From Lama guanicoe (lineage: Eukaryota), in assembly GCA_013239625.1 (NCBI GenBank), contig MU053934.1, forward strand, positions 9,939,352 to 10,003,351: a DNA stretch of 64,000 bases, read 5' to 3'. The position numbers and the translations under genes are program-made. Under the pieces are notes generated by a model. The model was not told the DNA's origin and searched no databases. It saw only the letters and a list, made by a program, of their open reading frames with translations. Positions 11,145 to 64,000 of this stretch are shown piece by piece; the stretch's first letter is position 1; every line of letters starts with the position of its first letter.

Positions 11145-12974
11145 GTCCCTGGTGCCGGTTTCCTTCCCAGGGAAGCTGCAGGGTTTTGCATGAGTGCTGG
11201 TAGCTTTCCTCCTGCCGGGACTCCTCTGCTCACGGAGTCTGTGCGTCGTCTGTGTCCCGAGGCCTCTAACTTTCACCACCCTGTTCAGGTTGTCCTACAG
11301 CAAATATGCTAGTTCTCATACACTCTGTTTGCTATAGGTGTCCTCTGTTTCATTGCATTTTTTTTTAAACAAATGGTAGTTGACAGTTAGAGGTTTGTTT
11401 TTTTTTTTAACTTTGATTAGTTTTTCAGTCTCTTAACATAGACCGTCATGCTCTCTCTAGGGACTTGATAAGTGCTCTCTCTCTTTTTTTTTTTTAAAGT
11501 TTACTTAACCTTTTAGTCCATCTGGAGTGCACAGCTCCTGTACTTGGATATCATTTCCAGGTGGCCAGCTGTGTGCCCCCTGCCTGCCACGCGAGCAGGG
11601 ACACTGCCTCCCCCAGCCCCATGGCGTTGCGCACTCCAGGGCCCCCTGGGTTCCAGGGGGTGGTGGGTTTCATGTGGCTTTTGCTCCAGGGCCACATTGG
11701 GCCACCTTAGTGTTCCACATGGGGCCCGAGAAGCGCCTGTCCCAGGGGCTACTGCGCTCTTCCTCTGACATGCCGCAGCCTCCGTTGTCCTTGGAGACCA
11801 GAGCGAGCCCTGGGTCTTCCTGACCGGGTTTCCAGAGCCCCCTCTGTGAGCAAGCTTTCTTGCCCTGAGCAGTGGTGTGGGTGGAGCGGAGGCCCCTTGG
11901 GGGCTGCAGACGGGCACCCTTACTTAGGCTGTGACTTAACGTGATTTAACGGTCTGAGCGCCTCCGAGCCTGCCCTATCCAAAACAGGACGTGCTTCTCC
12001 CGCCTTCGCGGTTCTCCGTGAAGTACCCCAGCTAGGCGGTGAGGGCCGAGCTGATGGGTTCCACCCTGCTCACCCCGCTTCCTGCCCGCCTCGCGTGGAC
12101 ATCATTGTGCTGTGTACTGAGTCCAGGGTGGGTGTTGGGCGCTCGTGCGTCACGTTAAAATCTCGGGGTGGTTTTGCCTGATCCCTGTGCTGCCCGCTTC
12201 AGAGGGGGAAGCTGAGGCTCAGAAAGGTGGGGAGTGGCGGGACGGGCTGTGAGCCCTGGCGCGTCCAGCGTCCCTGCCCTGTGGGGCCTCATGGAGGTTG
12301 AGGGCCAGGGTACGTGGGAGCTCCCTGACCTGCAGCCCCAGGCTGAGGGGCGTGTGACTGGGGGCTTCGGAGTGAGGCCGACTGGACAAGCAGCAGGGCC
12401 TCTCTCACCCTGCCCCTGAGCCTTCCTGGCCGAGTCGGGGCAGGGACGCGGGGAACGGGGGCCCCACTGCATGTCCGTCCTGGTGTGCACGTGTGTGTGA
12501 ACTTGTGTGTGTCCTCCACGCCAGCACAGCCACCCCCTCTGCTGAGCCAGCACCAGGGTCTGGCTGCCCTCCTGCTCCAGGCTGGGCCCACCTCTATGCT
12601 GGGAGGGCCCACCCAGAGATGTGGCTTCCTTCTGCCCTGCGGGGTGCACGGGGGAGTTAGCCTGGGTAGGTGATAGAGGTCCGAGGTCAGCAGCCAGCCC
12701 AGCCAGGTGGGGGTGACAGGGCCCGGGCCTGGTGGGCACAAGACGGGCACCTGTGGACCTTGGGTTCCCTGAGTAGTGGGACTGGCTGCTCCCTGAGGGC
12801 AGTGCTTGGTCTCAGCCCAGGGCTGCGGCCTGGGGCCGCGTGTGGAGGCTTGTGGGTGCATGGGCAGGTAGGCGGCCAGCAGGCAACTGACCAGGTGACC
12901 ACACCTCCCTCTTCTCCTCTTGCAGGGACCCCGACCGTCATGTTAAGGTAAAGCAGAGGGGCTCAGTGCTGAAC

Positions 12975-13136
12975 ATGCTAAGGAGACTGGACAAGATCAG
13001 GTTCAGAGGTCACAAGAGGGACGACTTCCTCGATCTGGCAGAGTCTCCAAACGCCTCGGACACCGAATGCGGAGACGAGGTGCCCCTGAAGACACCTCGG
13101 ACCTCGCCCCGGGACGGCGAGGAGCTGAGGGACCCT
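12975..13136 (+). CDS. GRAMD4: GRAMD4 coding exon 1 (exon itself starts at 12926)
   Basis: Acceptor ctcttgcag|12926; aacATG at 12975; MLRRLDKIRFRG...EELRDP; donor CCT|gtgagt; 162 nt, ends phase 0. Confidence 0.97.
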
Positions 13137-43981: not shown

Positions 43982-44056
43982 GTAAGTGGTCACTCCGGCC
44001 CTCCCGCCACGTCTGGGGTGCGGCCCCGCCCGGCTGACTGGCCCTCTCCCTTGCAG

Positions 44057-44166
44057 CCTGTTCATGTGGGTCCAGCCCGAGATCACGCAGAAGCTGTACG
44101 TCGCGCTGTGGGCCGCCTTCCTCGCCTCCTGCTTCTTCCCCTACCGCCTGGTGGGGCTGGCCGTGG
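44057..44166 (+). CDS. GRAMD4: GRAMD4 coding exon 12 (hydrophobic, transmembrane-like)
   Basis: ccttgcag|(N)LFMWVQPEITQKLYVALWAAFLASCFFPYRLVGLAV|gtaagg; 110 nt. Confidence 0.97.
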
Positions 44167-44844
44167 GTAAGGAGATGCCCGCCTGGCCAGAGCTGCCGCC
44201 CCATGGTGCGGCCCAGGGCCCAGGCGCCTGCCGCTCCCGCACGCCTGCCCCAGGCCTTGGCCCCCAGGAAGGAGGCATTCCTCCCTCCGTGCCTCTTCCA
44301 GGGGCTTTTTATCAAAATGTCTAAATTTGGGAGAAACAAAGGCCACGGCGTGTGGAGGCGCTGCTACGGTTTCTTAGGTCAAACTTGTTTTCTGCCGGCT
44401 GAGGGGGAGGGGCTGGTGGACCCGAGGCCCTGGGTGGGTGCCACGGTCACCTCTGAGCACTCGGGGGCTCATGGGCTCTCAGAGGACGGGCGTCAGAGAC
44501 GTGAGGGGTCAGGCGTGAAGGCAGGAGAGACCTGGGGTGGGAGATGGCATTGGGGGGGGCCTGCAGCATGAGCAGACTCAAAGTGTGTGCCAGGTGTGGG
44601 GGGCTCGAGGGGTCAGGGACAGTCGCGGGCCAGGGCAGAGGGCGTGTGTGGTGGGCCCTGGGGGTGGGCGGGTCCCGGGGGTTTAGGAAGCGGAGCCGGC
44701 AGGGTTTGTGGTGGATGGGGCGGGGGGAGGATCCGGGTCGGGGTTTGCCCTGAGCTGCTGGGCAGGTGGTACGGCTGCTGCTCAGCGTCACCAGGGAGGT
44801 GGGAGGAGCACTCGGGGGAACGGCACCTCGTTCTGCCCCTCCAG

Positions 44845-44999
44845 GACTCTACGCTGGAGTCAAGTTTTTCCTCATCGATTTCATCTTCAAGCGCTGCCCA
44901 AGGCTGCGGGCCAAGTACGACACCCCCTACATTATCTGGAAGAGCCTCCCCACCGACCCCCAGCTCAAGGAGCGCTCCAGCGCCGCCGTGTCGCGCAGG
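44845..44999 (+). CDS. GRAMD4: GRAMD4 coding exon 13
   Basis: cctccag|(G)LYAGVKFFLIDFIFKRCPRLRAKYDTPYIIWKSLPTDPQLKERSSAAVSRR|gtaggc; 155 nt, ends phase 0. Confidence 0.97.
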
Positions 45000-46034
45000 G
45001 TAGGCCCCGCGCGGGCGGGGAGGGACCAGGCCCAGCCCCGCCCCCTCGCACCCGGCCCGCAAGGGTGCTGGGGTCTCCCGATTCTGTGGGACCCTTGAGA
45101 CGGATGACTGTGGGGCTCTGCTGCTCCCAAGATCCCTGACGGACGTCCGGGGGCCCAGCCACCTGAAGGCCCCTCAGGGACCCGCCCACAGACTGGCTGG
45201 GGAGTAGCTCCTGCTGAGCCAGGCTGACCCCAGGCCAAAGGCAGGAGGGGGAGGGGCATTGGCCTTGACTGTCAAGGACCTGGGGGCCTTGGGACCAGGG
45301 AGCCCTGGGAGTGACCACTCTGTGGGTGGGTGCTGGGTCCCTGCTGTCCCCGGCTCTGAGGCTCTGGCAACAAGGCCAAGGTGGGCATGTTTTATGCTCA
45401 CAGGCTGGGACTGGGGCCCTGTTTCATTCATAGTGGAAGGCCAGGTGGGCGTTGGCACTGTGTCCAGAGCCGGGACGTGGTGGGCAGGCTGGCCTTGGTC
45501 CTCTTCTTGGGGTCTCAGACGAGTGGGGAGGTTCTGGGCTCAGTAGGACTCCCAGGGAGGTGTAGGAAGGCTTCCTGGAGAAAGTGGCATTGGCTTTCAG
45601 TCTGGTGTGTAAGTGATCCCTAAGGATAGAGTGTCCAGTGACCCGTCGATGTTTCTATCAGTGGAAGGGAAGCTCTGGGTCAAGTGTAGTTTCTTGGATA
45701 ACAAAGCTTGTTGAGGACCCGAACTCATAAGTCAGGTGTGCAGGTGGGCAGGCCGGAGCAGCCCGCACCTTGGTGAGCCGGCGGATGGCTCTGGTCATAC
45801 AGGCGGAGGTGGACCCGAGGGGTGAGGCACAGGAGCAGCCAGTCTGGCTCTCCCTAACAGTCACAGACTGGAGGGGGCTGGGCAGTGGGCTTCCTGGGGC
45901 GAGGGCGCCCCGCCAGGGTGTCGCAGGGCCGTGTCAGCACGCACAGCTCACCGAGCTGTTTATGACCTCATGTCACGTGGACCCCGCCTTTTCTTTTGTC
46001 TCGGTCACACATGTCTGTTGACCTTTCCGGCCAG

Positions 46035-46052
46035 CTGTCAGCGCATGACAAG
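46035..46052 (+). CDS. GRAMD4: Candidate alternative 18-nt GRAMD4 microexon (LSAHDK)
   Basis: ttgacctttccggccag|CTGTCAGCGCATGACAAG|gtacgg inside a phase-0 intron; frame-preserving with no stop; no transcript evidence available here. Confidence 0.55.
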
Positions 46053-46488
46053 GTACGGTGTCCGTGTGGGACCCCCTCTTCCTGCTGTGCCCTGATGCTG
46101 TGCGGTGCTGTGCCTTGACCCTGTTTGACTTACTAATGCTGCTTTTGGTGGCCTGTGCCATGGCCGGTTCTGGTTTCTGAAATTTTGGCATGAGCTGCTG
46201 GACCACATGTGCTGGGCTGGGCTCAGCACAGCGTCTGGGGGCAGTGACTTCGCCGGGGGAGAGGGGCAGCCCCCTCCCCAGCAGCTGGGCTTCTCTGCCC
46301 AGAAGGAGGGCTTGTGGGACGAGGACCAGGCACCAACGGGCCTTTTGGGGGGTGCGCACCCCACACCTGGGTGCCCCTGCCTCTCGCCTCGTCCACGCTT
46401 GCAGCTGGCCCCGGGGAGGCCGCGCGCACCCCGGCCCCCCTGCCCGCCACCGGGCCGTGGGGCTGACGGGCCTGTGCGCTCTCGGCAG

Positions 46489-46633
46489 CCACAGACCGCT
46501 GCCTCGCGGACCTACGCCTCCAGCGCGCCCGCCGGCCTGAGCAGGGACGAGGACCCTGGCCGCGTCCACGGCACCAGGAAGGGCAACTTCCATGAGATCT
46601 TCAACCTGACGGAGAGCGAGCGCCCGCTGGCAG
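46489..46633 (+). CDS. GRAMD4: GRAMD4 coding exon 14 (start of GRAM domain)
   Basis: ctcggcag|PQTAASRTYASSAPAGLSRDEDPGRVHGTRKGNFHEIFNLTESERPLA|gtgcgt; 145 nt. Confidence 0.94.
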
Positions 46634-47385
46634 GTGCGTGCGGGACACGTCCGCGTCCAGGCCAGGTGGGGCTGCCCTGCCCCAGGGCCAGGGGCCTGGC
46701 GGCGGGGACCCAGGAGAGCCGCCTGCCGTCTTCTTCCTGAACTTGCTGGGTGGGCGGGTTGGAGGGGCAGGCAGGCCTGCGGTGAGCGGTTTGACAGCAG
46801 AAAGGCAGGCAGCCTGCCCCCGAGCAGAGCCCACCAAGCGGGCATCCCAGCCTCAGGGTCACGCGTGCCGGTGCCGCCCAGTCCTGCTCTGGATAAGCTG
46901 GTGCACACTGGGGCTACCTGGAGAGCCAGGTGGTGACAGGCAGGTTGGAGTCCAGGGCCCCGGCCATCCTGTCCTCCCTGAAGTGCCCACCTTGCTGGGC
47001 TCTCGCTGAAGGGGCCTTCAGTGTTTTGGCACCTGCCGTGTGTGATACCAGCTACAGAAAGCAAACTTGGGAGAATTCCAGTCTTGATCTCCTGAACCCT
47101 CATTCTGCGGACCTGGACCACGAACCATGTGCTCTGAGAGCCAGGGCTGCAGTTTGATTTAAATCAAGCTCTTCTTTAAAAACCACACAAAGTCCTGTGC
47201 ATTCCCGGGGGAGGGGCAGCGCCTGCTGCCCAGGTGCTCTCAGTCGCCGCTTTGTGATCCCCCTTTCCTCCCACCCTGGGTGGAGGATGAACGTCAGTCC
47301 TTGAAAAGCCAGCACTGATGGTTCCAAGGTCAAACCAGAGAGGCTCTTCCCAGCGGGGAAGTCACGGCCATGTTGTCCCCTTCAG

Positions 47386-47479
47386 TGTGTGAGAACGGCT
47401 GGCGCTGCTGCTTGATCAACAGGGACCGGAAGATGCCGACCGACTACATCAGAAACGGGGTCCTGTATGTGACGGAGAA
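47386..47479 (+). CDS. GRAMD4: GRAMD4 coding exon 15 (GRAM domain)
   Basis: ccccttcag|(V)CENGWRCCLINRDRKMPTDYIRNGVLYVTE|gtgagt; 94 nt. Confidence 0.97.
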
Positions 47480-48160
47480 GTGAGTGAGGCGGGCGCGTCC
47501 CCGGGGTGGGCTGCGGGTGCTGTGACCCCCACGGTTAGAGGTCCAGGACGGCCCGGGGCTGGGGCCCCCCAGTCCTGTGACCGGCCTGAGCCGGCAGTGC
47601 CGTCCCTTCCCCAGGCCCCGGGATGGCCCTGGTCTGGGCTGCTCAAGCCGCGTGGCTGGAGCTGTGCGGTCCCGCCCACAGGGGTCCCAGCCCTAGGGCA
47701 GCAGGCAGGATCTTAGTTAGTTTCCTTTTGGGGCGTGGCAGCCAGGCGTGGGAGGTGGGGGAGCAGGTCCAGGGTGGGCTCTGTTCTCAGCATTGGGGGC
47801 CCTCGGCCACCTCATCCCCCACCCTCAGCCAAGGAGCCACCCCTCCCCCTCTACCCCTTCTTGGGGGGAACTGGCCGAGTAGACCCCTGGCTGGGCCTAC
47901 GGGACACTCGCTTCTCTGGTCAGGGTCTCAGTGATGTGCCTGTCGTAGGAACGTGAGTCAGGGTCAGCACAGAGCAGGGGGTTTTAAACTTGAAAAGCCC
48001 TGAGACCTTTGTAAAAGTAAAATCTTTCGTGAGAGGCCAGCACACTGTGGCAGGCTTGGGGGGCCTCTGTCTGGGGCTGGGGTGGCAGCAGCCGGCAGGG
48101 TCCCCTCTGGTTCACGTGCTGGGTTGGGCTCTGTCCTCCCTCCTCCCCTGCCCCGGGTAG

Positions 48161-49223: not shown

Positions 49224-49488
49224 GTAAGTTCTGGGCGGGGTGGGGCGGGGCAAGGAGGGGGGTGGATGAGCACGGGGACATTCTTGGGGCGAGGTCAGAG
49301 CCCCAGGCTGGCCAGGTTTGCAGCTGGATGGAGCAGCCTGGGAAGCCCCTCCCCCCTGGGCAGCAGGGACCCTGAGGCTGAGCCCAGCGCAGGTGCCCAG
49401 GGAGGGAGGGGTGGCGCTGGAAGCCGGGCTTCGGGGCTGCGTGGACCTGGCCGAGGGCGGGCTCACCGACAGTGCGCCCTCCCGCCAG

Positions 49489-51590: not shown

Positions 51591-52829
51591 AGGGGCGGGG
51601 GGCAGCTCGGTTTTCCTGGTAGGGTCCCCATGCACCGTGGGTGGCTGGACTGGGACAGGCTGACACCACTGGCCCCTTGGGGTGGCCCAGGACCCCTGTG
51701 GCCACTAGCACTGAAGGGCAGTAGGGATTTCAGCAACAAGGCTGAGGAGTGAGGTGGGCATCCAGGGAGGGCGTGTGGATGGCGAGAAGCTGGGAGGCTG
51801 GTGGCTGGTGGCCGGCAGGGAGGGGCATGCAGGGGCCAGTGCTCGGGGCAGCAGGGAGTGGCGGCGGGGGTGCCCAGAGATGGGGCAGAAGCAGCACCTT
51901 CAGTTTGGGTTCCAGGTCCTGGCCCCACCCAGAGGTGCCTTCCCTGGGGGCCGTGGGCATCTCTGGGACCAGGTGCTGCACTTGGCCCCCCCCCCCCGAG
52001 GTCTGAGGCTGAGGGGCCCTGCTCAGAGGTGGCCTTAGTGGCATGTGTGGCTCAGCTGTCCAGTCACTGACACTGGACACAGAAGGATGCAGGAACCCAC
52101 CTGGCTACTGCAACCACTGGGCTTGCACACAGACACCCGTGGGCACCCAGCTTCCTGCACCCTGAACCCCCGAGAGGCAGAGGACTGCCTGGGTCCCAGG
52201 GAGTGGCCAGAGCTGGATGGAAACCAGGTCCGGTGGGCCAGCTCCACTCTCAGAGCTGTGGCCTCGCACACCACACCTGTCCATCTGTCCACCTATCCTT
52301 TCATCCATCCATCCATCCACCACCAGGGCTGTTCCAGGGGCTGGGACGCAGCAGCGACGAACAACCCCTGGGGCCTGGCACACACCCAGCATCCCGGGAG
52401 GCTGCCCCTGCCTGGTGAATCCTGACAACACAGGAACGTACTGTTTACAGCAGCGCCGGTGAGTGGATCTGATGAACGTAGGGTAAATAGAGAAGGTCCC
52501 ACATTGACCACAGAAGGGTGTTCGTGGTGAACCAAGGGTTGTGGTTAATACCGTTCACCCCACGGTAACCAGCAGGCAGAGCCGACTCCACAGTTGTTGG
52601 CTGTAGCAGGGACTGGAGCGAGGGGGTGGCTACCAAGGTGTAGACCCTGGAGACCATAGGAGGCACGGGGCGCAGCCACTGCCCGTGGGCCAGGGCTGCG
52701 CATGGGCGGAAGGATCCAAGACCCTGTCATGTGCAGGAGAGCCTCCCAGCTGGCTGCGACCTGTCCCCAGAAGCCCAGCTCCTCCCTCCTCTGGGGCCCC
52801 ATGGCCCTCACTGTCCCAGGCTGGCCTCA

Positions 52830-53245
52830 CACCAACAACAAAACCATAGAGAAGAGCCTCAGAGATTCATGATCACAGAAGCCCCAAATCTACAAACCAT
52901 TTAAGAGGCACGTGTTCTGGACACAATCTGACAAATAAAAAACAACTGCATTTCTGTGCAAAAACACATTTTAAAGGCCAACAGATTGCAAACAGGAAGT
53001 TTTTAAGAACAAATCTAAACAGAGTTAAGAGACTGACGGGAAGATTGTCGACCTCTACTGAAGACACACAGCTTCATACAAATGGAAACACACGCGATGT
53101 TCACAGACATAGGAAACTCAGTTTTATGATAACAAGGTCTTCTCAGAGCACACAGAATGACAGTTACAGGAAATGACACGCAGTACAATGCCTTTAAATA
53201 AAGGGCAAAACCTGCAAAACTGAATACATCATCTGAGAATAAACA
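52830..53245 (+). mobile_element. Old L1 ORF2-region remnant
   Basis: A-rich; caactgcatttct, aaatggaaacacacgcgatgttcacagacataggaaactca. Confidence 0.5.
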
Positions 53246-53249
53246 TATA

Positions 53250-53468
53250 GGGCAGGGAAAAACCTTTCTCCTACCCTCTTAGATTCAGGAACTGAGGCCT
53301 GTGAATCAAACTGACAAAAGGCAAACTAGAAGAAAAGGCATACAATTTTTTAAATAACTAATGTGTAAATTTATTTTTCTGTGCCTGGAGGCTTTTTAGA
53401 GAAACAGTGGAGACCCAAAGAGGTGGTTAGGCCCAGAGCCTTAGGTACCATTTTAATAAAGGGCCATA
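53250..53468. mobile_element. ERV LTR-like fragment interrupted by an L1 (appears to continue after 54115)
   Basis: taccctcttag, aactgacaaaag, gacccaaagag motifs recalled from ERV LTRs; family not assigned. Confidence 0.45.
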
Positions 53469-54101
53469 CCCAGGCATATATCTGGAGGGAACTCTAATTG
53501 GAAAAGACACACACCCCCCAATGTTTATAGCAGCACTACTTAACAACAGCCAAAGCATGGAAGCAACCTAAATGTCCATCAACATATGACTGGAGAAAGA
53601 AGTTGTGGTTATATGTAGAATGGAATACTACTCAGCCATGAAAAAGAATAAAATTCGCAGCAACATGGATGGACCTGGGGACTGTCATACTAAGTGAAGT
53701 AAGCCAGAAAGGAAAAGAAAAATACCATATGCTATCACTCATATATGGAATAAAAATAAAAAGCACAAATGAACTCATTCACAAAATAGAAACAGGCTCA
53801 CAGACAGAGAAAACAAACTCATGGTTACCGGGGGGAAAAAGGGTGGGAAGGGATAAATTGGGAGTTCAAGATTTGCAGATACTAACTACTATATACAAAA
53901 TAGATAAACAACAAGTTTCAACTGTGCAGCACAGGGAACTATATTCAATACCTTGCAGTAACCTATGATGAAAAAGAACACGAAAAGGAATACATGTGTG
54001 TATGTGTATGACTGAAACATCATACTGTACACCAGCAATTGACGCAACACTGTAAACTGAATGTACTTCAATTAAAAAAACAAAACCCACCAACAACAGA
54101 A
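53469..54101 (+). mobile_element. 5'-truncated L1: ORF2 C-terminal end, 3' UTR and A-rich tail, with TSD
   Basis: aatgtttatagcagcacta, ggaagcaacctaaatgtccatc, atggaatactactcagccat, MDLGTVILSEVSQ; TSD aataaagggccata / agtgaagggccgta. Confidence 0.92.
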
Positions 54102-54669
54102 AGTGAAGGGCCGTAAATTCATCAGGAAGTGACAAGACAAAGGAAAGGCAGCTTGGACTTCTGGGGTAAAAGTAACCGCTGGGGAACTGCGAGTGGGGGA
54201 GGCTAAGGGCACAGGAGCGCGGACCCGCCTCAGTGCGGACGGTCTCCAGTGCTGAAGGGGTTCCGGAGAGCGGGGGCACCCCTCCCCCGGGGAAGGGCTG
54301 TCCTTTCGCGCAGACGGGGGAGGGCAGAGGGCTCCTTTTGCATCTGCTGCTTAACTGCCTTCTGCTCTAAGCAGTCCTTGTGCACAAGGGGCATATGTGG
54401 TGCCACGGTCTGGCCGTCTCGCACAAAACAGTGAGGGAGTGATACACTCAGCTTTCAAAACGGTCACCTTCCGGGAGGAGGCTGGGGAGGCTCGGTCCGC
54501 GCGGGACCGCGGGGAGCTCTGGGCTGAAGTCCGGGTTCCTGGCGCTGGGCCGGGGGTTGGGGCAGGGACACCATCATTCCCGTGTCTCTTGTTCTTTAAC
54601 TTGTACGTGTTTTCACAGAAAACACTCTGCTTTGAAAATAACAGGAACTTGTAAGAGGGGAAAAAAGCC

Positions 54670-56733
54670 AAATTCTGCCCAAAGTAACTTTATTTCTCTT
54701 CTCGAACACATCAGAGTGAATATGCCATTTTCTAACCTTGCATCCAACAAGATTAGAAGGGAAATTAAGACACCCCCCAACCCACACCGCCCAGGGACAG
54801 GAGACGGCGGGAGGGACAGTCAGACGCCCACCGACGCCCTCACCTCGGAATCCGGGTGACCAGGAAGAGGGCCTGGGTGTGGCTGCTGCCCCTTTTGCAC
54901 CGAGCCACGAAGGAAGTTAGAACCTAGACTGGTGCCTCTCCGTGATCCTGAGAGCTCACTTTCCAGCCATCGGTTCTGATTTTTCTCTTAAAAAATCAGA
55001 CTGCAGGCGATGTAGTCGCTGGGCCAGAGTCCTGGCGTGCAGGGAGGTCTGAAAGGTCTACGGTCCTGTGATGTGTCCTCCGCAACTCTGGGGGATGAGG
55101 GGGAAGGGCCCCAACAGTCACACGACCCCCAGGAACAGTTCCAAGGTTCACAATGTCCAAGGTCAGCACGTGGTCAGTGATTCTTGCCAAAGCCACCCGG
55201 GAGCCACGTGGTGCGACTTGGTTTCTTGCAGAACGTAAAGTCCTGACCCTCCAGCCTGCATGGCTTTTCTAGAATTGGCAGTGGATTCCAGGGCGGGCCA
55301 GTGACCGGCAACATTCACCAGGATGAGAAAGATGGAGACTCCCGGGGGGTCCCTCGCGCCCCCGTGCGGAGCAGCGGGCCCGGAGCGTCTCTTTACTCCC
55401 CACCCCCACCATCGTCGGCCCCTCTGACTTTCGTGATCACTCAACATGCTCTATCAAAACCGCTGTTGAAGCTGCCCTCGCATCCGGCCTGGGCGGGACT
55501 GAGGGAAGACGTGGGGACTCTCACGTGAACTGCAAAGCAGAAATCATTCCCAGCGATTCTGAGAACGCACGGCGTGCGCGGGCGGCCCGCACCACCGCCT
55601 GGCCCCGCCTGTCGCCTGGCCCCGCGCCACCGCCGGTCTCCGCCGCAGCCTCTCACGAAGCTTCCAGTGAAGGGCTTCAGGAGTTCACCCTTCCACGCAC
55701 ACGGGGAGCACAGACCAAACGAGGCCCGGCGGGAGCGCCCCGCCCCCGAGCGGGAAACAAATCGAAACATCGACAGTCAGGACCCCGCAGGCAGCCTTCC
55801 GGCTTAAAGGACAAAACTTGCAATAAATACAGAGAAGTAAGTGTGAAGATGAGAAAAGAACAAACCTGGCCCACGGACACAGCCTCGGGGCTGCACCGAA
55901 GTCAGCCCGGAGGGTGGGGCCCTCGCCCCAGGGGTGGGCCCTCGGCGTGAAGCTCACCCACCGCGCAGCTGCCCTCTGCCGTCCACCCTGCGCCTCCAGG
56001 GAGCACAGGTTTTCTATATTTAAAGCAGTAAGACACGTGTGAGGGCTTTACAAGCTGCCAGTCCCAGAGCTCCTGCCTTGGTCCTGCTCCCAGCTGGACT
56101 GTCTCAGAAACAGCCCTAGGATGAAAGCCAGAACCGAGGGCGTAAAGACACAGCGCCGTCACTGTCAGCGCCCTCCTCGCGCTAAATCGGGCTGCTCTGC
56201 AAGTGTGACCTGAAGCAGGACTGTTGCAGGGACAGGGAGGGCCCGGTAACGACGCCTGGCCACGAGCCAGGACGCAGGCAAAGACCACCAACTGCTCTCC
56301 AGGCCTGGCTCACGGCTACCAGAACGAGCCGGCGAATCCCACCTGCGGCCCTGCAGACGCCGCAACCCCGATGCAAAGCACTCATGTTGCACCGTCCCTA
56401 AGATCACAGCAACGGAGCCACTGACGGGCCGTGGTCAAATCTGCACTGGTGGCACGGCTGCAATCGCGAAGCTGGCGCCCCACACCCGCCAGTGCTGCCT
56501 GCTGACAATACGTTACAGGAGACGCAACCCTGGGATTCACACAGAACTGAAAATGCCAAACGCGGCCCCAAAACTGGTGACAGAAGGTATTTTTTCTAAA
56601 ATCAAGATTTAACTATCAAAAATAAATTTCTAAATTTAAAGGTATATCAGCATAATTGGTCTGCAGTAACCTTCTTAAGTAAGCGTCACGCTTCCCAAGC
56701 ACAGCAGGAAGGCGAGCGTTGCGAGGCGGCGTC
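54670..56733 (-). other. CERK: CERK 3' UTR (about 2 kb; 3' end approximate)
   Basis: Runs from the stop codon to a minus-strand AATAAA; AU-rich block just after the stop. Confidence 0.65.
54689..54694 (-). terminator. CERK polyadenylation signal AATAAA
   Basis: TTTATT on the + strand, followed on the minus strand by U-rich downstream sequence (ggcttttttcc, tgttattttc). Confidence 0.7.
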
Positions 56734-56791
56734 TCAGCTGCCTGGTTCCTCGATTCCTCGTGCAAAGAGCCGGACCAGCTGGCAGTGGACC
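56734..56791 (-). CDS. CERK: CERK last exon (coding part)
   Basis: Minus strand tctctgcag|(R)VHCQLVRLFARGIEEPGS*; TGA at 56736-56734. Confidence 0.95.
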
Positions 56792-58464
56792 CTGCAGAGA
56801 CAAAGGGCCGCCCTCACACCCCGCGCGTCCCCCGGCCCTCGGCCCCACAGCCGGCCCAGGGCGGAGGTGGGCCTCGTTCACCACGGACAGTGGGTCTCAC
56901 CGCGGCCGTCGGGTCCCACCCGGCAGTGACAGGTCAGGGGCGCAGAGTGATTCAGCTACGCGCCTGAGAGGCCCATCTTCAAAGGGCAGCTGGTGGCCAA
57001 GTGGAAACCCAGAGATCCAGAGACCCAGTTCTAATTCCAGCACCACACTTGCCAGCGAGTGACAAAGCCACAGGCCTCCACTGCCCCGACCTCATCAGCA
57101 CCGACCACACAGGCCCCGGGGAGGGTCCCACGAAGGGCAGCCCCACGCATGCAGGAGACGCAGGAAACTTTCAGTCATGGAAGACAAGCAGCCCCATGCC
57201 GGCCAGAGAGGAGGGCTGGGCTGAGGTCCCCGGGGACCCCCCTGCCTGCCACACCAGCTCCAGGACGTGACGAGTGAGGGGCTTGGAGGTCAGCGTCGGC
57301 TCTTGGGTGCCCTGCTGGCAGGGCGACCTTCCCACTTCATTAATGATGTCACAGCCTCCTTGGATCTTTAGCAACAAAAACCCCGTAACTGACTCACTCT
57401 TCAAGGCACCGTAGTATTTATCAAGTTAAGATATTTTTCACAAAAGAATGCCTTGCCTAATTTTAAAAAATTCATAAGCCAGTAGGAAAAGTAATTCCAT
57501 TTCCTTAACTCATAAAATGAGTCTACAGAAGCCGAATCCCTGCATGTACGACTGGTGTGGTGGGGTTTCCTGCCACCTCACAGCCCCTGGTCCCCAGACA
57601 TGAGCTGGGCAGCCACTGCCACACTGACCACATCCTGGTCACAAGAACAGGGAGCAGGGGGCGTGGGACTCAGGCCCCTGATGGCTTCGTTTGGACGCTA
57701 ATGGTAAGAAGACAAAGCTGGGACCAGCAGCTGGTCAGCTGAGAAGCCAGAAAGTGGGGACTTATCAACAGGGACACAAGTCATCTTCCACACCGTAACT
57801 GGACACGTGGAAGGGGACACCCACCACATCACTCATCCTTCCACGTGGCAGGCGGGTGGGCCTCCAGCTGCCCCTCACCTTCCTCATGTGATGCCCGCTC
57901 TGCTGTCATCAGGGAGTGTCCAGCTTGGTCTCCTTCAAGTGGACCAAGATCCTGAAGACATCTGTACCGGGGCAGGATCCTTCTGCAACTTTACCATTCT
58001 CCCTAATCTCATCTAATTTTTACACACACACCTCAACCAATAGCCTATTGCAAAAAAACAGCTTCCTTCACTGTATCTGTCCACGGGGAAGAAACTTGCT
58101 TTGCACTCGTATGGTTGTGTGATACGTGTAGTCAGACTACAAATTTCCAAGTCCAAGTGCAATGGGCCCAGCAGGCCCAGGACCAGGGCGTGAGCCTGGT
58201 GCCAGGCCCTCAGCAGGGCTGCAGCCAGGCTCCAGAACCGCCTCCTGGGGTCCAGTGAACCCAGGACTCGGAAGTGCCCACGAAGGCGGCTTGTCTGCTT
58301 AATTAGGAGATGGGAGAAAGAACGCCAGCGCTGGGGTGCAGGGCATGGAAGAGAAAAACAAAGTAGGGGACTTCTGAACCGGCAAAACCCCCAGTATCTT
58401 CCTGAGGCCCCCACGCCACGCGGCGCCGGGGACGGCGCGGCGGCGGCCTCCGAGCCCCGCTCAC

Positions 58465-58673
58465 CTGACGTCCACGGCGGGGCTGCGCAGGACCTCGCCG
58501 TCGCAGTTCCAGGAGCTGCTGGGCGCGGCGCAGCAGCAGGGCGGCTGGTCGCTGCAGATCTGCCCGAACCGCTTCTTCCCGCGGCCCCGGACGCTGCCGT
58601 CCTCGTCCTCCGCCGCCTGGGACACAAACTGGAACCTCTTGACGCGGTAAACTTCAACGAAAGTGAAGTCGAA
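58465..58673 (-). CDS. CERK: CERK penultimate exon
   Basis: Minus strand tcttggtag|FDFTFVEVYRVKRFQFVSQAAEDEDG...SSWNCDGEVLRSPAVDV|gtgagc; 209 nt; carries the DGE motif of the DAG-kinase/SPHK/CERK family. Confidence 0.96.
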
Positions 58674-58837
58674 CTACCAAGAGACGGCGAGACGGACCGT
58701 GTTCCTGGAGGCCGGGGCCAGGACCGCCTCCGAGCTGCCGTCCCACAGCTGGAGACGAGGAGTCCCCCAGGCCCGCGTCCCAGACTCTTAAAACCCGGCT
58801 CACCCGCAGGGACAGTGGCTTCTTAAAGAATTCTGTG

Positions 58838-58988
58838 GGGGGAGGTGTGCAGCTCAAGTGGGAGAGCACGTGTCTGATCAGCACACACAAGGGCCTCGGT
58901 CAATCCCCAGTACCTCCTCCAAAAATAAACAAACAAGGAAACCTAGCTACCTCCTCCCCTAAAAAGACTAAAAATAGAAAAAAAAAAG
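58838..58988 (+). mobile_element. tRNA-derived SINE (Vic-1-like) with exact TSD
   Basis: agctcaagtgg A-box, caatccccagtacctcc, A-rich tail; TSD agaattctgtg at 58827-58837 and 58989-58999. Confidence 0.88.
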
Positions 58989-59077
58989 AGAATTCTGTGC
59001 TTCCCGAGCACTGACTCGTACCATTGTTTATCTCCTGAACCACCTCTACTTAAAAAGCCACATAAAAACTCCACCGC

Positions 59078-59165
59078 GGGGAGGGTGCAGCTCAGCGCAG
59101 AGCACGCTTAGCACGCAGAGGTCCTGGGTTCAACCCCCAGGGCCTCCGTCAAAAAACAGCAAAAA
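59078..59165 (+). mobile_element. Short tRNA-derived SINE (Vic-1-like)
   Basis: ggggagggtgcagctcag...gcttagcacgcagaggtcctgggttcaacccccag then an A-rich tail. Confidence 0.8.
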
Positions 59166-59673
59166 CCATTATCAGACTAGATCTTACAAGCAATTCAAGT
59201 AAATAAGCCCACAAATCTTGCTGAGACCAGAGGCTGACCAGCAGCTGCACTTGTCCGGGCACCGTCAGACCCGGGGCCTCCCCTGGGTCACCACAAGGGT
59301 GCCGGGGACTAAGGAAAGGTTTGCTGGAAGGGTCTCCACAGAGCTCCTTTCTGGGAGCCAAGATTTTGTTGTAAGTGACCCGCCAGGGCAACACAAAATT
59401 TCACCGCATCGCTTTGCTCTGTTAATAGCAGGAGAAAGGACAGGAAGACATGTCAACATTCCCACCTCCTAGTTCCTGCGCTCAAGGACTTCACCTTCTT
59501 AAATGAGACTTTATAAGAAGTAGCTACGAAGGAGCGTTCAAAACGGGTGAAATGCAAACAAAAATCTCTCGCCCCACCCCCTGACCTCACAGTGGCTCCT
59601 ACGACACAGACGGGGTCACCCAGGCGGAAGCCGCCCGCCAGCCCGGCCCGCGTTGGGGAAACGCAGCCCTCAC

Positions 59674-59879
59674 CTGGTCGCCCTGGTTGGTGTGCCTGAC
59701 CAGGAACCTCAGGAAGTTGAACCTGGAGCATTTCCGGATGAGGATGAGGTCAGAAGAGCCGTCCCCCAGGTGGGCGGACGGGGAGAGGCCCCTCGGGCAC
59801 CGGGGACAGGCGCAGGACATGTTGGTGGCGTTGATGGCCAGGAACTGCCCGCAGACGACCTTCCACTCCTCCACCTCCT
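59674..59879 (-). CDS. CERK: CERK exon (third from the 3' end); includes the calmodulin-binding-type segment CSRFNFLRFLVRHTNQ
   Basis: Minus strand tgcttcag|(E)EVEEWKVVCGQFLAINATNMSCACPRCPRGLSPSAHLGDGSSDLILIRKCSRFNFLRFLVRHTNQGDQ|gtgagg; 206 nt. Confidence 0.97.
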
Positions 59880-60091
59880 CTGAAGCAGAAAGAATTTCAG
59901 ACACTGCATGGATCCTGAGCTGGCGGGTGGGGGTCCTGAGCTGACAGGGGCGGGATCACTGCCATGAACGCTCCCCGCAATCAGCCATCAACACAGAGAA
60001 AACTGTGTGGCTGCTGGGCCCTGAGGTCGCTCCCGAAAGTCAGAGCTGTTTCTTGGGTCCTCATCTGGGACTTCTGGACAATGATTCAGAG

Positions 60092-60350
60092 CAGGGCTCA
60101 CCAAATCTGGCCCACCACCTGGTTTTGTGAGGCCTGTGAGCTGAGAACGATTTGCACATTTTTAAATGGTGGTGGAAAAAAGATCAAAAGAAGAAGAGCA
60201 TTTTGTGACATATGAAAAATGACACAAAATACAAATTTCAGCGTCCGTAAGGAGTTGCTGGAGCAGCACCGAGCCCACTCCCTTCCAAGCGGCTAGCGAA
60301 GCCTGAAGACTTTACTCGAGCCCGGAGCAGAACCACTCGCTGACCCCGTT
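60092..60350 (+). mobile_element. MER58B-like hAT-Charlie element
   Basis: ccaaatctggccc, tgagctgagaa, acatttttaaatgg, aaaagaaga, ttttgtgacatatgaaaa, aaatttcagcgtcc. Confidence 0.75.
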
Positions 60351-60557
60351 CCAGAACATTCTAGAGACTGGCACCACAGTGGTATTTCAGAGGAACCTGG
60401 CAGGATGGGCGTGACCACAATATCCGGCAAAGGCCACCGCATGCCCTGCCTGGAGCTAAAGCGGGAGCAGGTACAGAGCTGTGGGGCGGACGGGGCAGGT
60501 GGGGGAACCCAGGCTGGATTGGGGTCCCGGCCAGGCCGCAGGCGGCCCGGGCCTTAC

Positions 60558-60634
60558 CGCCGCTCTCCAAGCCGTACAGCGACCGCTTCTGCTCCTCTTC
60601 CAGCTGCTGCCTGCTCTGCCTGCAAACGAAGCAC
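60558..60634 (-). CDS. CERK: CERK exon (fourth from the 3' end); completes the CxxxCxxC motif (CRAGCFVC)
   Basis: Minus strand cccccag|(G)CFVCRQSRQQLEEEQKRSLYGLESG|gtaagg; 77 nt. Confidence 0.96.
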
Positions 60635-61175
60635 CTGGGGGACGAGAGCCCTGCCTTCAACGCGGACGCACGCCTGAGTGTTCCAGTTCTCTTCACGCGA
60701 CAGAAAGTTCAAAAAGCTTTCCTTAAAAATACTTTGCTCGCATGTTGGGTTTCTAAAATTAGATCCACTTAAAAAAACTGCAGACATCAGGCCTTCCTCT
60801 GACATTTATAAACACTGCAAAGAGCAGAACATCTGTACGTCCATCTAGTCACAGTCCACAATGCCAAGTCCGCAGAGATGTGCGGAGGGGCTCCCACTGG
60901 CTGGCCCGCTCCCCTCACTCAGCCCCCAGGGGCTCAGGGTCTGGACTGGCCCCTCCTGACCGCAGGGTGGGCCCCCCAGCTGGTGGGGGCACAGGAGGCC
61001 CGTGTAGTCAGTCCCATGGCCGCCCGTAGCAGGACCCCGACCTCTGGACACGCTGAACCAGCACCCCCCCCCAGTCTACACTGCAAGGACTGTGCACCCA
61101 CTTCACAGCAGGAGCCCGAAGCCGGGTGGGCTCATATCGCATCATCTGACAAAAACACACAAGGGAGGTGCTTAC

Positions 61176-61281
61176 CCTGCCCGGCAGGGCTTCCCGTCCC
61201 GCGGAGAGCCCACTGTGTGCTGCGCCGGGAGGAAAGACACCGTCCCTTCGTAGCAGTGATGGGAGAGGAAGGTCTTCAAAC
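61176..61281 (-). CDS. CERK: CERK exon (fifth from the 3' end)
   Basis: Minus strand gttcttag|(G)LKTFLSHHCYEGTVSFLPAQHTVGSPRDGKPCRA|gtaagc; 106 nt. Confidence 0.96.
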
Positions 61282-61763
61282 CTAAGAACAGAGCGAGATG
61301 GAGAAACACATCCACACACGTCACTTCTCAGGGAGGAGGCCTCACCGTCGGCTGCTGCAGGGCAGGGGGCATGGGTGACCCGAGACACCTGGTGACAGGG
61401 CGTCCGCAGGAGGCAGGGCCCGCCCGCTTGTCTCAGCTGCTACCACCACCCCGGGGACTGCAGGCTCCCGGCCACCACGCTGCCTTCCACGCCGGCAAAG
61501 GGGACATCTCTGCCACCAGCGACCCCTTGTGGCCTCGACGACGTGGCACCACTGAGACTCCTGGCTTTCCTAAGTTCTTCATCATTCCGTTCCCAAGATT
61601 CAGGTTTTAATAAATATGTAGCTTTGCACTTCTTACGTTTTAATTTTAAAACCATGCTAGTTTTATTAAGTGGACATTTTTAATGGATAAAGTTCACCAA
61701 GGTACCATTCCTTTCTCTCCCAAAGGGTTTAGATTTTAATGTTCGGAATTATTCAACTTAACA

Positions 61764-63982
61764 CAGGCAGACCTGGCTTTGGGGTGCTTCGCAGAGACAG
61801 CATTTTTTCTTAAAACAAGTTGAACGTTTGCGGCAACCCTGCGCCACTCTCCCCACANNNNNNNNNNNNNNNNNNNNNNNNNNNNNNNNNNNNNNNNNNN
61901 NNNNNNNNNNNNNNNNNNNNNNNNNNNNNNNNNNNNNNNNNNNNNNNNNNNNNNNNNNNNNNNNNNNNNNNNNNNNNNNNNNNNNNNNGGGCGTGACTAA
62001 CCGTGCTTGTGTAAGACGGTAAACTTAATTGATAGACATCCCGTGCTCTGACTCCCCCGACTGCCGCTCCCCAGTCCCGCCCTCTCCTCGGGCCTCCCTA
62101 GTCCCTGAGACACAACAATATTGAAAGTAGGCCAATTAACAACCTCCAATGGCTCCTAAGCATTCAAGTGAGAGTCCCGCGTCTCTCATTTTAAATCAAA
62201 ATCTAGAAATGACTAAGCTTTGTGAGGCAGGCAGGCCGGAAGACAGAAGAGGCTGAAAGCCGGGCCTCCTGTGCCAGAGTCATCCAGGCTGTGGACGCAA
62301 AGGAAAAGCTCCTGAGGGAAACTGAACGTGCTGCCCCAGCGAACACATGATGAGAAACGATAAGAGAGCGGAACAGCCTAATCGCTGACACGGAGAAAGT
62401 CTGAGTGGTCTGGACAGGAGATCAAAGCAGCCCAACATCCCCCTAAGCCAAAGCCGAACCTGGGTGAGGCCCGAACTCCCTACAACTGTGTACAGGCTGA
62501 GAGGTGAGGCCACTGCGGAGGGAAAATGTGAAGCCGGCAGAGGTGGGATCACGAGGGTTCGGGGAAGAAGTCTCACAACTCAGCGCAGGAGCAGCAGGTT
62601 CTCCACAGGATGCAGCGCAGACCCCTCGTGAAGGCGGCCGCGCTCAGCCTCGCATTTTCAACGCAGACAAAACGGCCTCGTATTGGAAGATGCCGCCGAG
62701 GACTTTGATAGCTGTAGAGAAGTCAGCACCTGGCTTCGAAGCTTCGAGGGACAGGCCGGCTCTCTCGTGAGGGGCTCACGCAGCTGGCGGCTTTCAGCTG
62801 AAGCCAGTGCTCGTCGCCCATTCCGCAATCCCTAGGCCCTTACGGTTCACGCCAGACCCACTCTGCCTGCGCTCTAGAAAAGCACCGTCAAAGCCCGCTT
62901 GTAACTACTTGTTAGCAACACGGTTTACTGAGTATCTGAAGCCCACTGTTGAGACCTACTGCTCAGTAAAAAAGATTCCTGTCAGATACGGCTGCTCGCT
63001 GGCAGCGCCTGGTCACTCAGGAGCTGATGGGCACGGCCAGTGAGATCCGTGTTCTCACGCCTGCAACACGACAGCCGTTCCACGGTGACGTCAACTTTCG
63101 AGTCTTATTCTTTAAGAAATACCTTTCGTGAGGTGGTGGCTGCCACGGACAGTGGCTTCTTTGATGGATCTGAGCAACGTCCACTGAGAACTTTCTGGAA
63201 AGGGCTCACCATTCCAGATGCGGCTAAAAACACTCGTGATTCACGGAAAAGGTAAAAATACCAACATTCACAGGAAGTTTGGAAGAAGTTGGTCCCCACC
63301 CGCACGGACGACTCTGAGGGGCTTAAGACGTCGGTGGAGGAAGTGACTGCAGACGTGGCGGAAACGGCAGGAGAGCAGAACTAGACGTGGAGCCGGAGAC
63401 GAGACTGAGCCGCCGCAGCCTCGGGAGGAGACGCGAACGGAGGAGGAGCTGCTGCTGACGGGTAAGGAAAGAGGGCGGCTTCTAGAGGTGGATTCTATCC
63501 CTGGTGAAGACGCCGGGAAGACTGTTGAAATGACCGAGAACCGTGCGTAAACTTAGCAGAGGAAGCAGCAGCCGGGTCCGAGAGGACTGACTCCAAATTT
63601 GAAAGAAGTTCCACTGAGGGTAACGTGCTGTCAAACAGCACTGCCTGCAACGGAGAAACTGCTCACGGAAGCTACTCGAGGTGGCAAACTTCACTGCTGT
63701 CTTATTTTAAGACGTTGCCACCGCCTCGCCAGCCTTCAGAACCTGCACCCTGACCGGCCAGCGGCCTCCCCAGCGGGGCCAGACCCGCCAGCAGCGAAGA
63801 TGGCCGCTTCCTGAAGGCTCGGGTGGTGGCCAGCATTTTTAAACCAAGCTGGGCACCGTTTTTACACATAATGCTATGCACGCTTACTACACGACAGCAT
63901 AGTGTGAATGTTGCTTTATTTTGCTAATTGCTTTCTTGAGGAGCTCTGGAACGGAACCCGAAGTATCTCCCCAGTGTGTCTA
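61764..63982 (+). mobile_element. Tigger1 (TcMar-pogo) DNA transposon, near full length, inactive; lies in a CERK intron
   Basis: Left end caggcagacct...ggcaaccctgcg; right end ctggaacggaacccgaagtatctcc; broken transposase peptides IFNADKTASYWKMPPRTLIA, TEYLKPTVETYCS, LRTFWKGLTIPDA. Confidence 0.9.
61858..61988. other. Assembly gap (131 N)
   Basis: Run of n. Confidence 1.
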
Positions 63983-64000
63983 ATAAATTTACCCAAGAGT

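What the first reader, a model, noticed from the sequence alone, without database searches (positions are those of the whole stretch)
45985..46195. Candidate regulated 18-nt in-frame microexon (LSAHDK) in GRAMD4
Seen in sequence: the phase-0 intron 45000-46488 holds a U-rich island with a pyrimidine tract (ccttttcttttgtctc), an acceptor ttccggccag, 18 nt at 46035-46052 and a good donor AAG|gtacgg. Inclusion gives ...AAVSRR-LSAHDK-PQTAASR... (584 aa) with no stop. Downstream lie 8 YGCY motifs in 46083-46159 (including tgctgtgc x3), ACTAAT at 46132-46137 and a GCATG near 46188. Established: downstream YGCY clusters (MBNL), ACUAAY (QKI) and GCAUG (RBFOX) promote tissue-specific inclusion. Inference: a muscle-, glial- or neural-regulated insert in the linker between the membrane segment and the GRAM domain, absent from the 578-aa canonical form. 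No UGC next to the 3' splice site, so probably not SRRM4-type. It may already be annotated in some species.
Basis: partly seen in the sequence, partly recalled or inferred. Interest (0 to 1): 0.75.

Follow-up and report, generated by a model that had tools for sequence, protein, structure and literature searches.

The report
Conserved 18-base GRAMD4 microexon
A six-codon mini-exon hidden in an intron of the GRAMD4 gene of this camelid matches an insert already annotated at the same spot in turtle, lizard and fish GRAMD4, so it is almost certainly a real and very old alternative exon, although its use and its regulators in this mammal could not be tested here.

Summary

By splice-site strength alone the pair is ordinary. 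Thirteen AG..GT pairs in 36 kb of GRAMD4 introns score as well.

The deciding evidence came from public proteins. At exactly this exon junction, GRAMD4 models of a tortoise (RefSeq isoform X3), a lizard and a paddlefish carry LSGHEK. A shad carries LSGFEK and a goodeid fish LSCIEK. Only one other of 109,846 stop-free 18-mers in the window scores as close to LSGHEK as the window's 18 nt does. Among 442 AG-18-GT segments the next best scores 9 against 23.

So this is the orthologue of an ancient vertebrate cassette microexon, already present in other species' annotation.

Not shown:
- Conservation across mammals.
- Any regulator. The YGCY cluster does not exceed local dinucleotide shuffles.

Interest is modest.

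The parts
44845..44999 (+). Upstream constitutive GRAMD4 exon (GLYAGVKFF...AAVSRR). Its donor is AGG|gtaggc.
   Evidence: Read. It is 100% identical to P0019 over 84 of 84 residues at 44844-45095. The approximate donor score is 5.37.
45956..46032 (+). AG-free zone upstream of the candidate acceptor. The gap from the previous AG, at 45954, is 79 nt.
   Evidence: Only 14 of 2734 intronic AGs have a gap this long. The 10 real acceptors of the gene have gaps of 16-74 nt. This fits a distant branch point.
45967..45971 (+). CTCAT, a branch-point-like yUnAy 64 nt upstream of the AG and just upstream of the pyrimidine tract. A second one, TTGAC at 46018-46022, lies 13 nt upstream.
   Evidence: Motif scan. 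Branch-point use is inferred, not shown.
45987..46002 (+). Pyrimidine tract ccttttcttttgtctc, set 32-47 nt back from the AG.
   Evidence: It holds one TCTT, one TTCT and one TCTC.
46033..46034 (+). 3' splice-site AG (ttccggccag|CTG).
   Evidence: The approximate acceptor score is 3.41. That is better than 3 of the gene's 10 real acceptors, but 384 of 2733 intronic AGs do as well.
46035..46052 (+). 18-nt cassette microexon encoding LSAHDK. It is the orthologue of the LSGHEK, LSGFEK and LSCIEK inserts in other vertebrates.
46053..46058 (+). 5' splice site AAG|gtacgg.
   Evidence: The approximate donor score is 8.27, better than 4 of 10 real donors. Only 36 of 2248 intronic GTs do as well. The dromedary gene model P0001 uses the same donor.
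46083..46159 (+). T/G/C-rich stretch downstream of the donor. It holds 8 YGCY and 3 TGCTGTGC, and includes a 23-nt duplication (46083-46101 and 46106-46124).
   Evidence: The count is not above local dinucleotide shuffles.
46132..46137 (+). ACTAAT, a QKI/SF1-type core.
   Evidence: There are 2 ACTAAY in 36.3 kb of the gene's + strand.
46188..46192 (+). GCATG, an RBFOX core without the leading U.
   Evidence: The expectation is 0.14 per 200 nt.
46489..46633 (+). Downstream constitutive exon (PQTAASR...ERPLA).
   Evidence: tblastn of P0001 gives 95.9% identity over 46486-46632.

Best explanation
Window 46035-46052 is the camelid copy of an ancient alternative 18-nt cassette exon of GRAMD4, at least as old as the bony vertebrates. 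When it is spliced between the exon ending at 44999 and the exon starting at 46489, it adds six residues, L-S-A-H-D-K, without changing the frame. The insert falls in the linker about 35 residues before the GRAM domain, which appears unstructured. The acceptor is weak, with a set-back pyrimidine tract and a 79-nt AG-free zone that suggests a distant branch point. The donor is good. This is the usual anatomy of an exon that is skipped by default and included only where an activator is present or a repressor absent.

Shown here: the sequence features, the orthology with annotated inserts, and the position relative to the GRAM domain.

Inferred: that the exon is still spliced in this mammal, that inclusion is tissue-regulated, and that the T/G-rich downstream stretch acts as the enhancer. 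I take inclusion in at least one tissue to be about 75% likely. I leave the regulator open: a neural SRRM3/4-type factor, an MBNL/CELF-type factor or PTBP de-repression.
For: 1. At exactly this junction, 5 of the 22 GRAMD4 proteins carry a 6-residue insert.
- P0004, Chelonoidis, RefSeq isoform X3: LSGHEK.
- P0010, Phrynosoma: LSGHEK.
- P0013, Polyodon: LSGHEK.
- P0016, Alosa: LSGFEK.
- P0012, Goodea: LSCIEK.

2. The window's LSAHDK scores 23 (BLOSUM62) against LSGHEK.
- Only 1 other of 109,846 stop-free 18-mers on both strands reaches 23.
- Of 442 AG-18-GT segments in the window the next best scores 9.
- Of the 5 AG-18-GT segments in this intron the others score 1 or less.

3. Length (18 nt), frame, AG and GT are all intact.

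4. The donor is in the top 1.6% of intronic GTs.

5. The AG-free zone is in the top 0.5%.

6. The exon sits in a T-rich island that only 0.6% of 241-nt windows in the gene's introns match.

7. The dromedary model P0001 splices from this same donor to the next exon.

8. The insert lies between the hydrophobic region and the GRAM domain. Pfam places GRAM at 304-425 of P0004 and the insert at 265-270. The AlphaFold model shows coil at 241-303.
Against:
- None of the mammalian proteins I could reach shows the cassette between the two exons. The cat isoform X4 P0003 and the bat P0009 lack it. The tamarin P0002, whale P0020, cotton rat P0023 and alpaca P0019 have other junctions or tails.
- Only proteins of 152-483 aa could be searched, and clusters at 90% identity hide 6-residue isoforms. 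The absence is therefore weak evidence.
- By approximate site scores alone, 13 pairs in the gene's introns are as good.
- Camel-to-window identity here, 21 of 23 residues upstream of the exon, equals neutral intron identity. It adds nothing about selection.
- The AlphaFold model is poor overall (mean pLDDT 37.8).
Confidence: 0.8

Rival explanations
1. A conserved-looking relic. The exon was functional in the vertebrate ancestor and is still used in reptiles and fishes, but it is no longer spliced in mammals or in camelids. On this reading the intact signals are a recent leftover.
For: None of the 6 mammalian proteins shows the insert as a cassette. None of the three bird models without an insert (P0005, P0006, P0007) shows it either. 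The acceptor is weak (3.41).
Against: About 320 million years of neutral drift would have erased an unused 18-mer. Here 4 of 6 residues are identical and 2 are conservative replacements, with AG, GT and length intact. The retrievable proteins were only short or partial ones, and 90% clustering hides 6-residue isoforms.
Confidence: 0.12
2. The 3' end of an alternative first exon driven by an internal promoter, as in the dromedary model P0001. Transcription would start in the intron, and an in-frame ATG (46011 in the window) would give an N-terminally truncated protein without the membrane region.
For: P0001 starts in intron sequence and runs through LSAHDK into the next exon. The window's frame is open upstream and has an ATG at 46011.
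Against: In five other species the six residues lie between the two flanking exons, as a cassette. P0001 also reads through another intron (49369-49480), which is typical of an ab initio model. A stretch free of AG and of stops upstream is what a distant branch point gives. The CACGTG at 45973 is not unusual (16 in 36.3 kb).
Confidence: 0.05
3. A chance AG..GT pair in a GC-rich intron with no biological meaning.
For: Thirteen pairs of 3-30 nt in the gene's introns, and 28 in the window on both strands, score as well on both sites. Nine of the 28 have a length that is a multiple of 3. The YGCY count is explained by local composition.
Against: The peptide match to the insert annotated at the same junction in other vertebrates is about a 1 in 100,000 event per position. 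The long AG-free zone and the T-rich island point the same way.
Confidence: 0.02
4. This rival concerns regulation only. The exon would be a neural or endocrine SRRM3/SRRM4-type microexon, not the MBNL-, QKI- or RBFOX-driven muscle or glial exon that the reader proposed.
For: From recalled knowledge (Irimia et al. 2014), most deeply conserved 3-27-nt microexons are neural. The length of 18 nt, the weak acceptor, the set-back pyrimidine tract and the long AG-free zone fit. The MBNL reading loses its statistical support.
Against: There is no TGC in the 200 nt upstream of the acceptor, and an upstream UGC is the hallmark of that class. The insert appears in general-purpose gene models of five species, which suggests inclusion in commonly sampled tissues.
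Confidence: 0.3

Closest known systems
Annotated 6-residue insert of GRAMD4 in other vertebrates, for example GRAMD4 isoform X3 of Chelonoidis abingdonii (P0004). Also present in Phrynosoma (P0010), Polyodon (P0013), Alosa (P0016) and Goodea (P0012).
   Same: Same exon junction (after ...SRR, before xQT/xQP). Same length of 6 residues. L1, S2 and K6 are invariant and position 5 is acidic.
   Different: Positions 3 and 5 differ conservatively (A for G, D for E). In this genome the exon is seen only as DNA, and I could not see its inclusion or its annotation in this species.
Deeply conserved vertebrate microexons of the SRRM3/SRRM4 (eMIC) programme (recalled: Irimia et al. 2014; Gonatopoulos-Pournatzis et al. 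2018).
   Same: Size of 3-27 nt, frame-preserving, very old, and located in a surface or linker region next to a domain. Weak acceptor with unusual upstream anatomy.
   Different: There is no UGC between the pyrimidine tract and the AG. Neural specificity is unknown.
MBNL-activated cassette exons with downstream YGCY clusters (recalled RNA-map rule).
   Same: Eight YGCY lie 31-107 nt downstream of the donor.
   Different: The count equals what the local dinucleotide composition gives and is partly a duplication. Dependence on MBNL is untested.
Exons with distant branch points and long AG exclusion zones (recalled: Gooding et al. 2006).
   Same: A 79-nt AG-free zone, with the pyrimidine tract 32-47 nt from the AG.
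   Different: The branch point itself is not mapped.

Membership tests
Orthologue of the vertebrate GRAMD4 LSGHEK microexon | Lies in the intron between the exon ending ...SRR and the exon beginning xQT | tested here: met
Orthologue of the vertebrate GRAMD4 LSGHEK microexon | 18 nt (6 codons), in frame, no stop, bounded by AG and GT | tested here: met
Orthologue of the vertebrate GRAMD4 LSGHEK microexon | Peptide similar to L-S-x-x-[E/D]-K beyond chance | tested here: met
   Score 23. One other of 109,846 18-mers reaches it. The next best of 442 AG-18-GT segments scores 9.
Orthologue of the vertebrate GRAMD4 LSGHEK microexon | Included in mRNA of this species | not testable with these tools
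There is only a dromedary gene model that uses the donor.
SRRM3/SRRM4-type neural microexon | Length 3-27 nt | tested here: met
   18 nt
SRRM3/SRRM4-type neural microexon | UGC motif close upstream of the 3' splice site | tested here: not met
   No TGC in 45835-46034
SRRM3/SRRM4-type neural microexon | Neural-specific, SRRM3/4-dependent inclusion | not testable with these tools
   No reads
MBNL-activated exon | YGCY cluster downstream, above background | tested here: inconclusive
   Top 0.19% of windows genome-wise, but 842 of 2000 local dinucleotide shuffles reach the count.
MBNL-activated exon | Inclusion depends on MBNL1/2 | not testable with these tools
   This needs an experiment.
QKI-activated exon | Bipartite site: ACUAAY plus a UAAY half-site within about 20 nt (recalled) | tested here: not met
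   The ACTAAT core is present at 46132. I see no TAAY within 20 nt on either side in the sequence.
RBFOX-activated exon | UGCAUG downstream | tested here: not met
   Only GCATG preceded by G at 46188, and no TGCATG in 46053-46252. GCATG is expected 0.14 times per 200 nt.

The most novel reading that the evidence does not exclude
Inclusion of the microexon may build a switchable phosphorylation site. The upstream exon ends in R-R and the microexon begins with L-S, both invariant in all six insert-bearing sequences (and the window). Only the long isoform therefore has R-R-x-S, the classical motif of PKA and other basophilic kinases (recalled consensus), about 35 residues before the GRAM domain. 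GRAMD4's membrane or lipid engagement, or its pro-apoptotic action, would then be under kinase control only in tissues that include the exon. This arrangement would have been kept since the bony-vertebrate ancestor.
Probability: 0.2. Interest if true: 0.55.

Novelty: already known. Interest (0 to 1): 0.35.

Why it matters
GRAMD4 is a little-studied membrane protein with a GRAM domain. The papers I saw link it to p73-dependent apoptosis and, in mouse, to dendritic-cell homeostasis (PMC11726347, section 14 read).

A six-residue insert kept for more than 400 million years just before the GRAM domain marks a functionally important spot. It gives a simple handle for isoform-specific experiments, such as testing the R-R-L-S site.

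For the scan, the case shows that a splice-site pair that is ordinary by score can still be validated through annotated inserts in distant species. It also shows that motif-count arguments for regulators should be checked against local composition.

None of my five paper searches that named GRAMD4 or Gramd4 (with microexon, alternative splicing, Mbnl, Srrm4 or exon) turned up a description of this exon. For some searches I saw only listings, and one search listed 40 of its 75 papers. Supplementary tables, where exon lists usually sit, were closed.

Tried and rejected
- Reads: the look-up of sequencing runs listed 24 runs.
- Rfam on 44000-47500 gave 0 matches.
- RNA structure of 45930-46170 has a z-score of -0.65, and 54 of 200 shuffles fold as well. 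I dropped the idea that upstream GCACAGC pairs with the downstream GCTGTGC copies.
- Tandem Repeats Finder found nothing in 45900-46300. The repeat finder found a 23-nt duplication.
- Splice-site scoring used position tables recalled from memory and is approximate. It does not single out the candidate.
- The MBNL reading fails against local shuffles.
- An alternative first exon or promoter, suggested by P0001, is rejected in favour of a cassette because of the five cassette-type inserts. The CACGTG E-box at 45973 is not unusual.
- AlphaFold2 of P0004 with 13 sequences gave mean pLDDT 37.8, too poor for more than 'coil in 241-303'.
- Earlier scan notes held nothing near this place and nothing on GRAMD4.
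- Papers:
  - GRAMD4 with microexon gave 0 papers.
  - GRAMD4 with alternative splicing gave 26 papers, 25 listed. I read passages of PMC13592132, which reports an alternative 5' site event in human GRAMD4 without giving its place. I read passages and section 14 of PMC11726347, which reports a mouse Gramd4 splice-site variant without giving its place.
  - Gramd4 with Mbnl gave 6 papers, with Srrm4 gave 1, and with exon gave 75 of which 40 were listed. For these I saw listings only, and none is about this exon.
- Full-length (about 578-584 aa) isoforms could not be reached. I did not build or search the joined spliced model.

Full report
**What is there.**

One search shows the finding exactly as described.
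- The GRAMD4 exon 44845-44999 ends with codons for AAVSRR, followed by gtaggc.
- The next constitutive exon begins at 46489 (PQTAASR), so the intron 45000-46488 is phase 0.
- Inside it lie a pyrimidine tract (45987-46002), an acceptor ttccggccag ending at 46034, and 18 nt (46035-46052) that translate to LSAHDK.
- The donor is AAG|gtacgg.
- The listed motifs are all in place. There are eight YGCY between 46083 and 46159, three TGCTGTGC (46083, 46096, 46106), ACTAAT at 46132 and GCATG at 46188.
- There is no TGC in the 200 nt upstream of the acceptor.

I did not build the joined spliced model, so I did not check the totals of 578 and 584 aa.

**Which genome.**

The Vicugna pacos protein P0019 matches the window at 100%. 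That is 70 of 70 residues at 12927-13136 and 84 of 84 at 44844-45095, including a tail read from the intron. The dromedary protein P0001 is 91-97% identical over the pieces it shares with the window. The window is therefore from a camelid (family Camelidae). It follows that identity with the camel says nothing about selection. The 23 residues read from the intron just before and through the exon show 21 of 23 identities. The read-through of another intron shows 94.6%.

**Is the splice-site pair special by itself? No.**

I scored the sites with position tables recalled from memory, so the scores are approximate.
- The acceptor scores 3.41. That is better than 3 of the 10 real acceptors I could place in this gene (range -0.65 to 11.15), but 384 of 2733 intronic AGs do as well.
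- The donor scores 8.27. That is better than 4 of 10 real donors, and 36 of 2248 intronic GTs do as well.
- Thirteen AG..GT pairs of 3-30 nt in 36 kb of GRAMD4 introns, the candidate included, reach both scores.
- The figure is 28 in the whole window on both strands, of which 9 have a length that is a multiple of three.

Two other features are unusual.
- The acceptor is preceded by a 79-nt AG-free zone. Only 14 of 2734 intronic AGs have one as long, and the real acceptors have 16-74 nt.
- The exon sits in a T-rich island, 33% T against 20% for the intron. Only 0.6% of 241-nt windows in the gene's introns reach that.

**The deciding evidence.**

I searched exon by exon.
- The frame that contains the downstream exon found one protein (1 scored, 20 left out as unnamed). 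This was the dromedary GRAMD4 model P0001 of 234 aa. It begins in intron sequence, runs through LSAHDK, and splices from the same donor into PQTAASR.
- Searching with P0001 found only itself and a tamarin model, P0002 (2 of 4 scored, 32 left out).
- Searching with the two-exon part of P0002 found 22 proteins of 152-483 aa (30 scored, 77 left out).

At the junction after ...SRR, these 22 proteins fall into three groups.
- Five carry a six-residue insert: P0004 (Chelonoidis abingdonii, RefSeq isoform X3), P0010 (Phrynosoma) and P0013 (Polyodon) have LSGHEK, P0016 (Alosa) has LSGFEK, and P0012 (Goodea) has LSCIEK followed by further, probably intronic, residues.
- Nine go straight on: P0003 cat, P0005, P0006 and P0007 birds, P0009 bat (two residues shorter), P0011 frog, and P0014, P0015 and P0017 fishes.
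- Eight have something else:
  - P0002 has an 18-residue insert of another kind.
  - P0008 has a 7-residue insert that begins with V.
  - P0018 is divergent.
  - P0019 reads through the intron.
  - P0020 has another tail.
  - P0021 and P0022 jump to a later exon.
  - P0023 ends LSKLTSTNSPK.

**How far this is from chance.**

The window's LSAHDK shares L1, S2, H4 and K6 with LSGHEK, and has A for G and D for E. Its BLOSUM62 score is 23, where a perfect match scores 32.
- Of 109,846 stop-free 18-mers on both strands of the window, only one other reaches 23, and it has no AG/GT flanks.
- Of 442 AG-18-GT segments the next best scores 9.
- Of the five AG-18-GT segments in this intron the other four score 1 or less.

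The window's 18 nt are therefore the orthologue of an exon that predates the split between ray-finned fishes and tetrapods. Unused sequence would not have kept frame, length, AG, GT and four of six residues over that time.

**What it does to the protein.**

In P0004 the insert is residues 265-270. The hydrophobic helices end near residue 237, and Pfam places the GRAM domain at 304-425. The AlphaFold2 model is poor overall (mean pLDDT 37.8). The stretch 241-303 is coil with the lowest confidence, 23-30 per block. That fits a flexible linker but does not prove one.

An inference of mine follows. The upstream exon ends R-R and the insert begins L-S in every insert-bearing sequence. Inclusion therefore creates R-R-x-S, the classical basophilic-kinase motif (recalled). 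The short form has no serine there.

**Regulation.**

- Across the whole window the YGCY cluster is rare (0.19% of 77-nt windows).
- Dinucleotide shuffles of the local 200 nt give 9.14 +/- 1.85 YGCY against 10 observed, and 842 of 2000 shuffles reach the observed count. Eight in 77 nt is reached by 132 of 2000.
- Part of the cluster is a 23-nt duplication.
- The signal is thus a U/G/C-rich composition. It could serve MBNL, CELF or other factors, and it is not a specific MBNL signature.
- GCATG is a single core without the leading U and is expected 0.14 times per 200 nt.
- ACTAAT is rare (2 ACTAAY in 36.3 kb), but no TAAY half-site lies within 20 nt (read).
- The region is not unusually structured (z = -0.65) and matches no Rfam family.
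- The weak acceptor, the set-back pyrimidine tract and the long AG-free zone fit a regulated exon with a distant branch point.
- The lack of an upstream UGC argues against the classical SRRM4 type.

I cannot decide among the regulators.

**What could not be done.**
- No collection of animal genomes was available for aligning the intron.
- Full-length isoforms were beyond the length range of the three protein searches.
- Clustering at 90% identity would hide a six-residue isoform. The absence of the insert from the six mammalian proteins seen is therefore weak evidence.
- Five paper searches that named GRAMD4 or Gramd4 brought up no description of this exon. Searches were seen as listings only, and one search listed 40 of its 75 papers. 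Supplementary tables, where such exons are usually listed, were closed.

**Verdict.**

The microexon is real in the evolutionary sense and is already present in the public annotation of other vertebrates. Its use in this mammal is likely but not shown. The proposed regulators are unsupported. It is an ordinary, if neat, member of the class of ancient microexons. The most interesting open point is the R-R-L-S site that inclusion would create.

Noticed in passing
window 45000-45098: The alpaca RefSeq-type protein P0019 ('isoform X1', 471 aa) reads through the donor at 44999|45000 for 32 codons of this same intron and then stops. It is 100% identical to the window. It is an annotated isoform that would lack the GRAM domain, through intron retention or an alternative 3' end.
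   Followed up: partly
window 45973-45978: A CACGTG E-box (gtCACGTGga) lies inside the AG-free zone upstream of the microexon. It is not unusual, with 16 in 36.3 kb of the gene's + strand.
   Followed up: partly
window 46083-46124: A 23-nt direct duplication (46083-46101 and 46106-46124, 84% identical) supplies two of the three TGCTGTGC copies.
   Followed up: yes
P0003, P0004 and P0013 (hydrophobic region, for example P0004 residues 149-216): The membrane region of GRAMD4 gives a sub-threshold Pfam match to PRT_C (PF08372, E = 4.5e-5 to 8.7e-4, below the curated cut-off). This hints at a hairpin-type membrane anchor like that family's.
   Followed up: no
window about 52000-64000: AT skew changes sign near 52 kb, from negative to positive. 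This suggests that the neighbouring gene lies on the minus strand. There is an N run at 61858-61988.
   Followed up: no
P0021 and P0022 (sturgeons): These gene models jump from ...SRR directly to YKVLSVLPG. They skip the three exons that encode the first part of the GRAM domain. This is either an annotation artefact or a GRAM-less isoform.
   Followed up: no
P0023 (Sigmodon hispidus): This rodent model ends ...VSRRLSKLTSTNSPK. Like the insert it begins with L-S after SRR, but it then diverges. It comes from a 2.2-kb contig and I could not interpret it.
   Followed up: no
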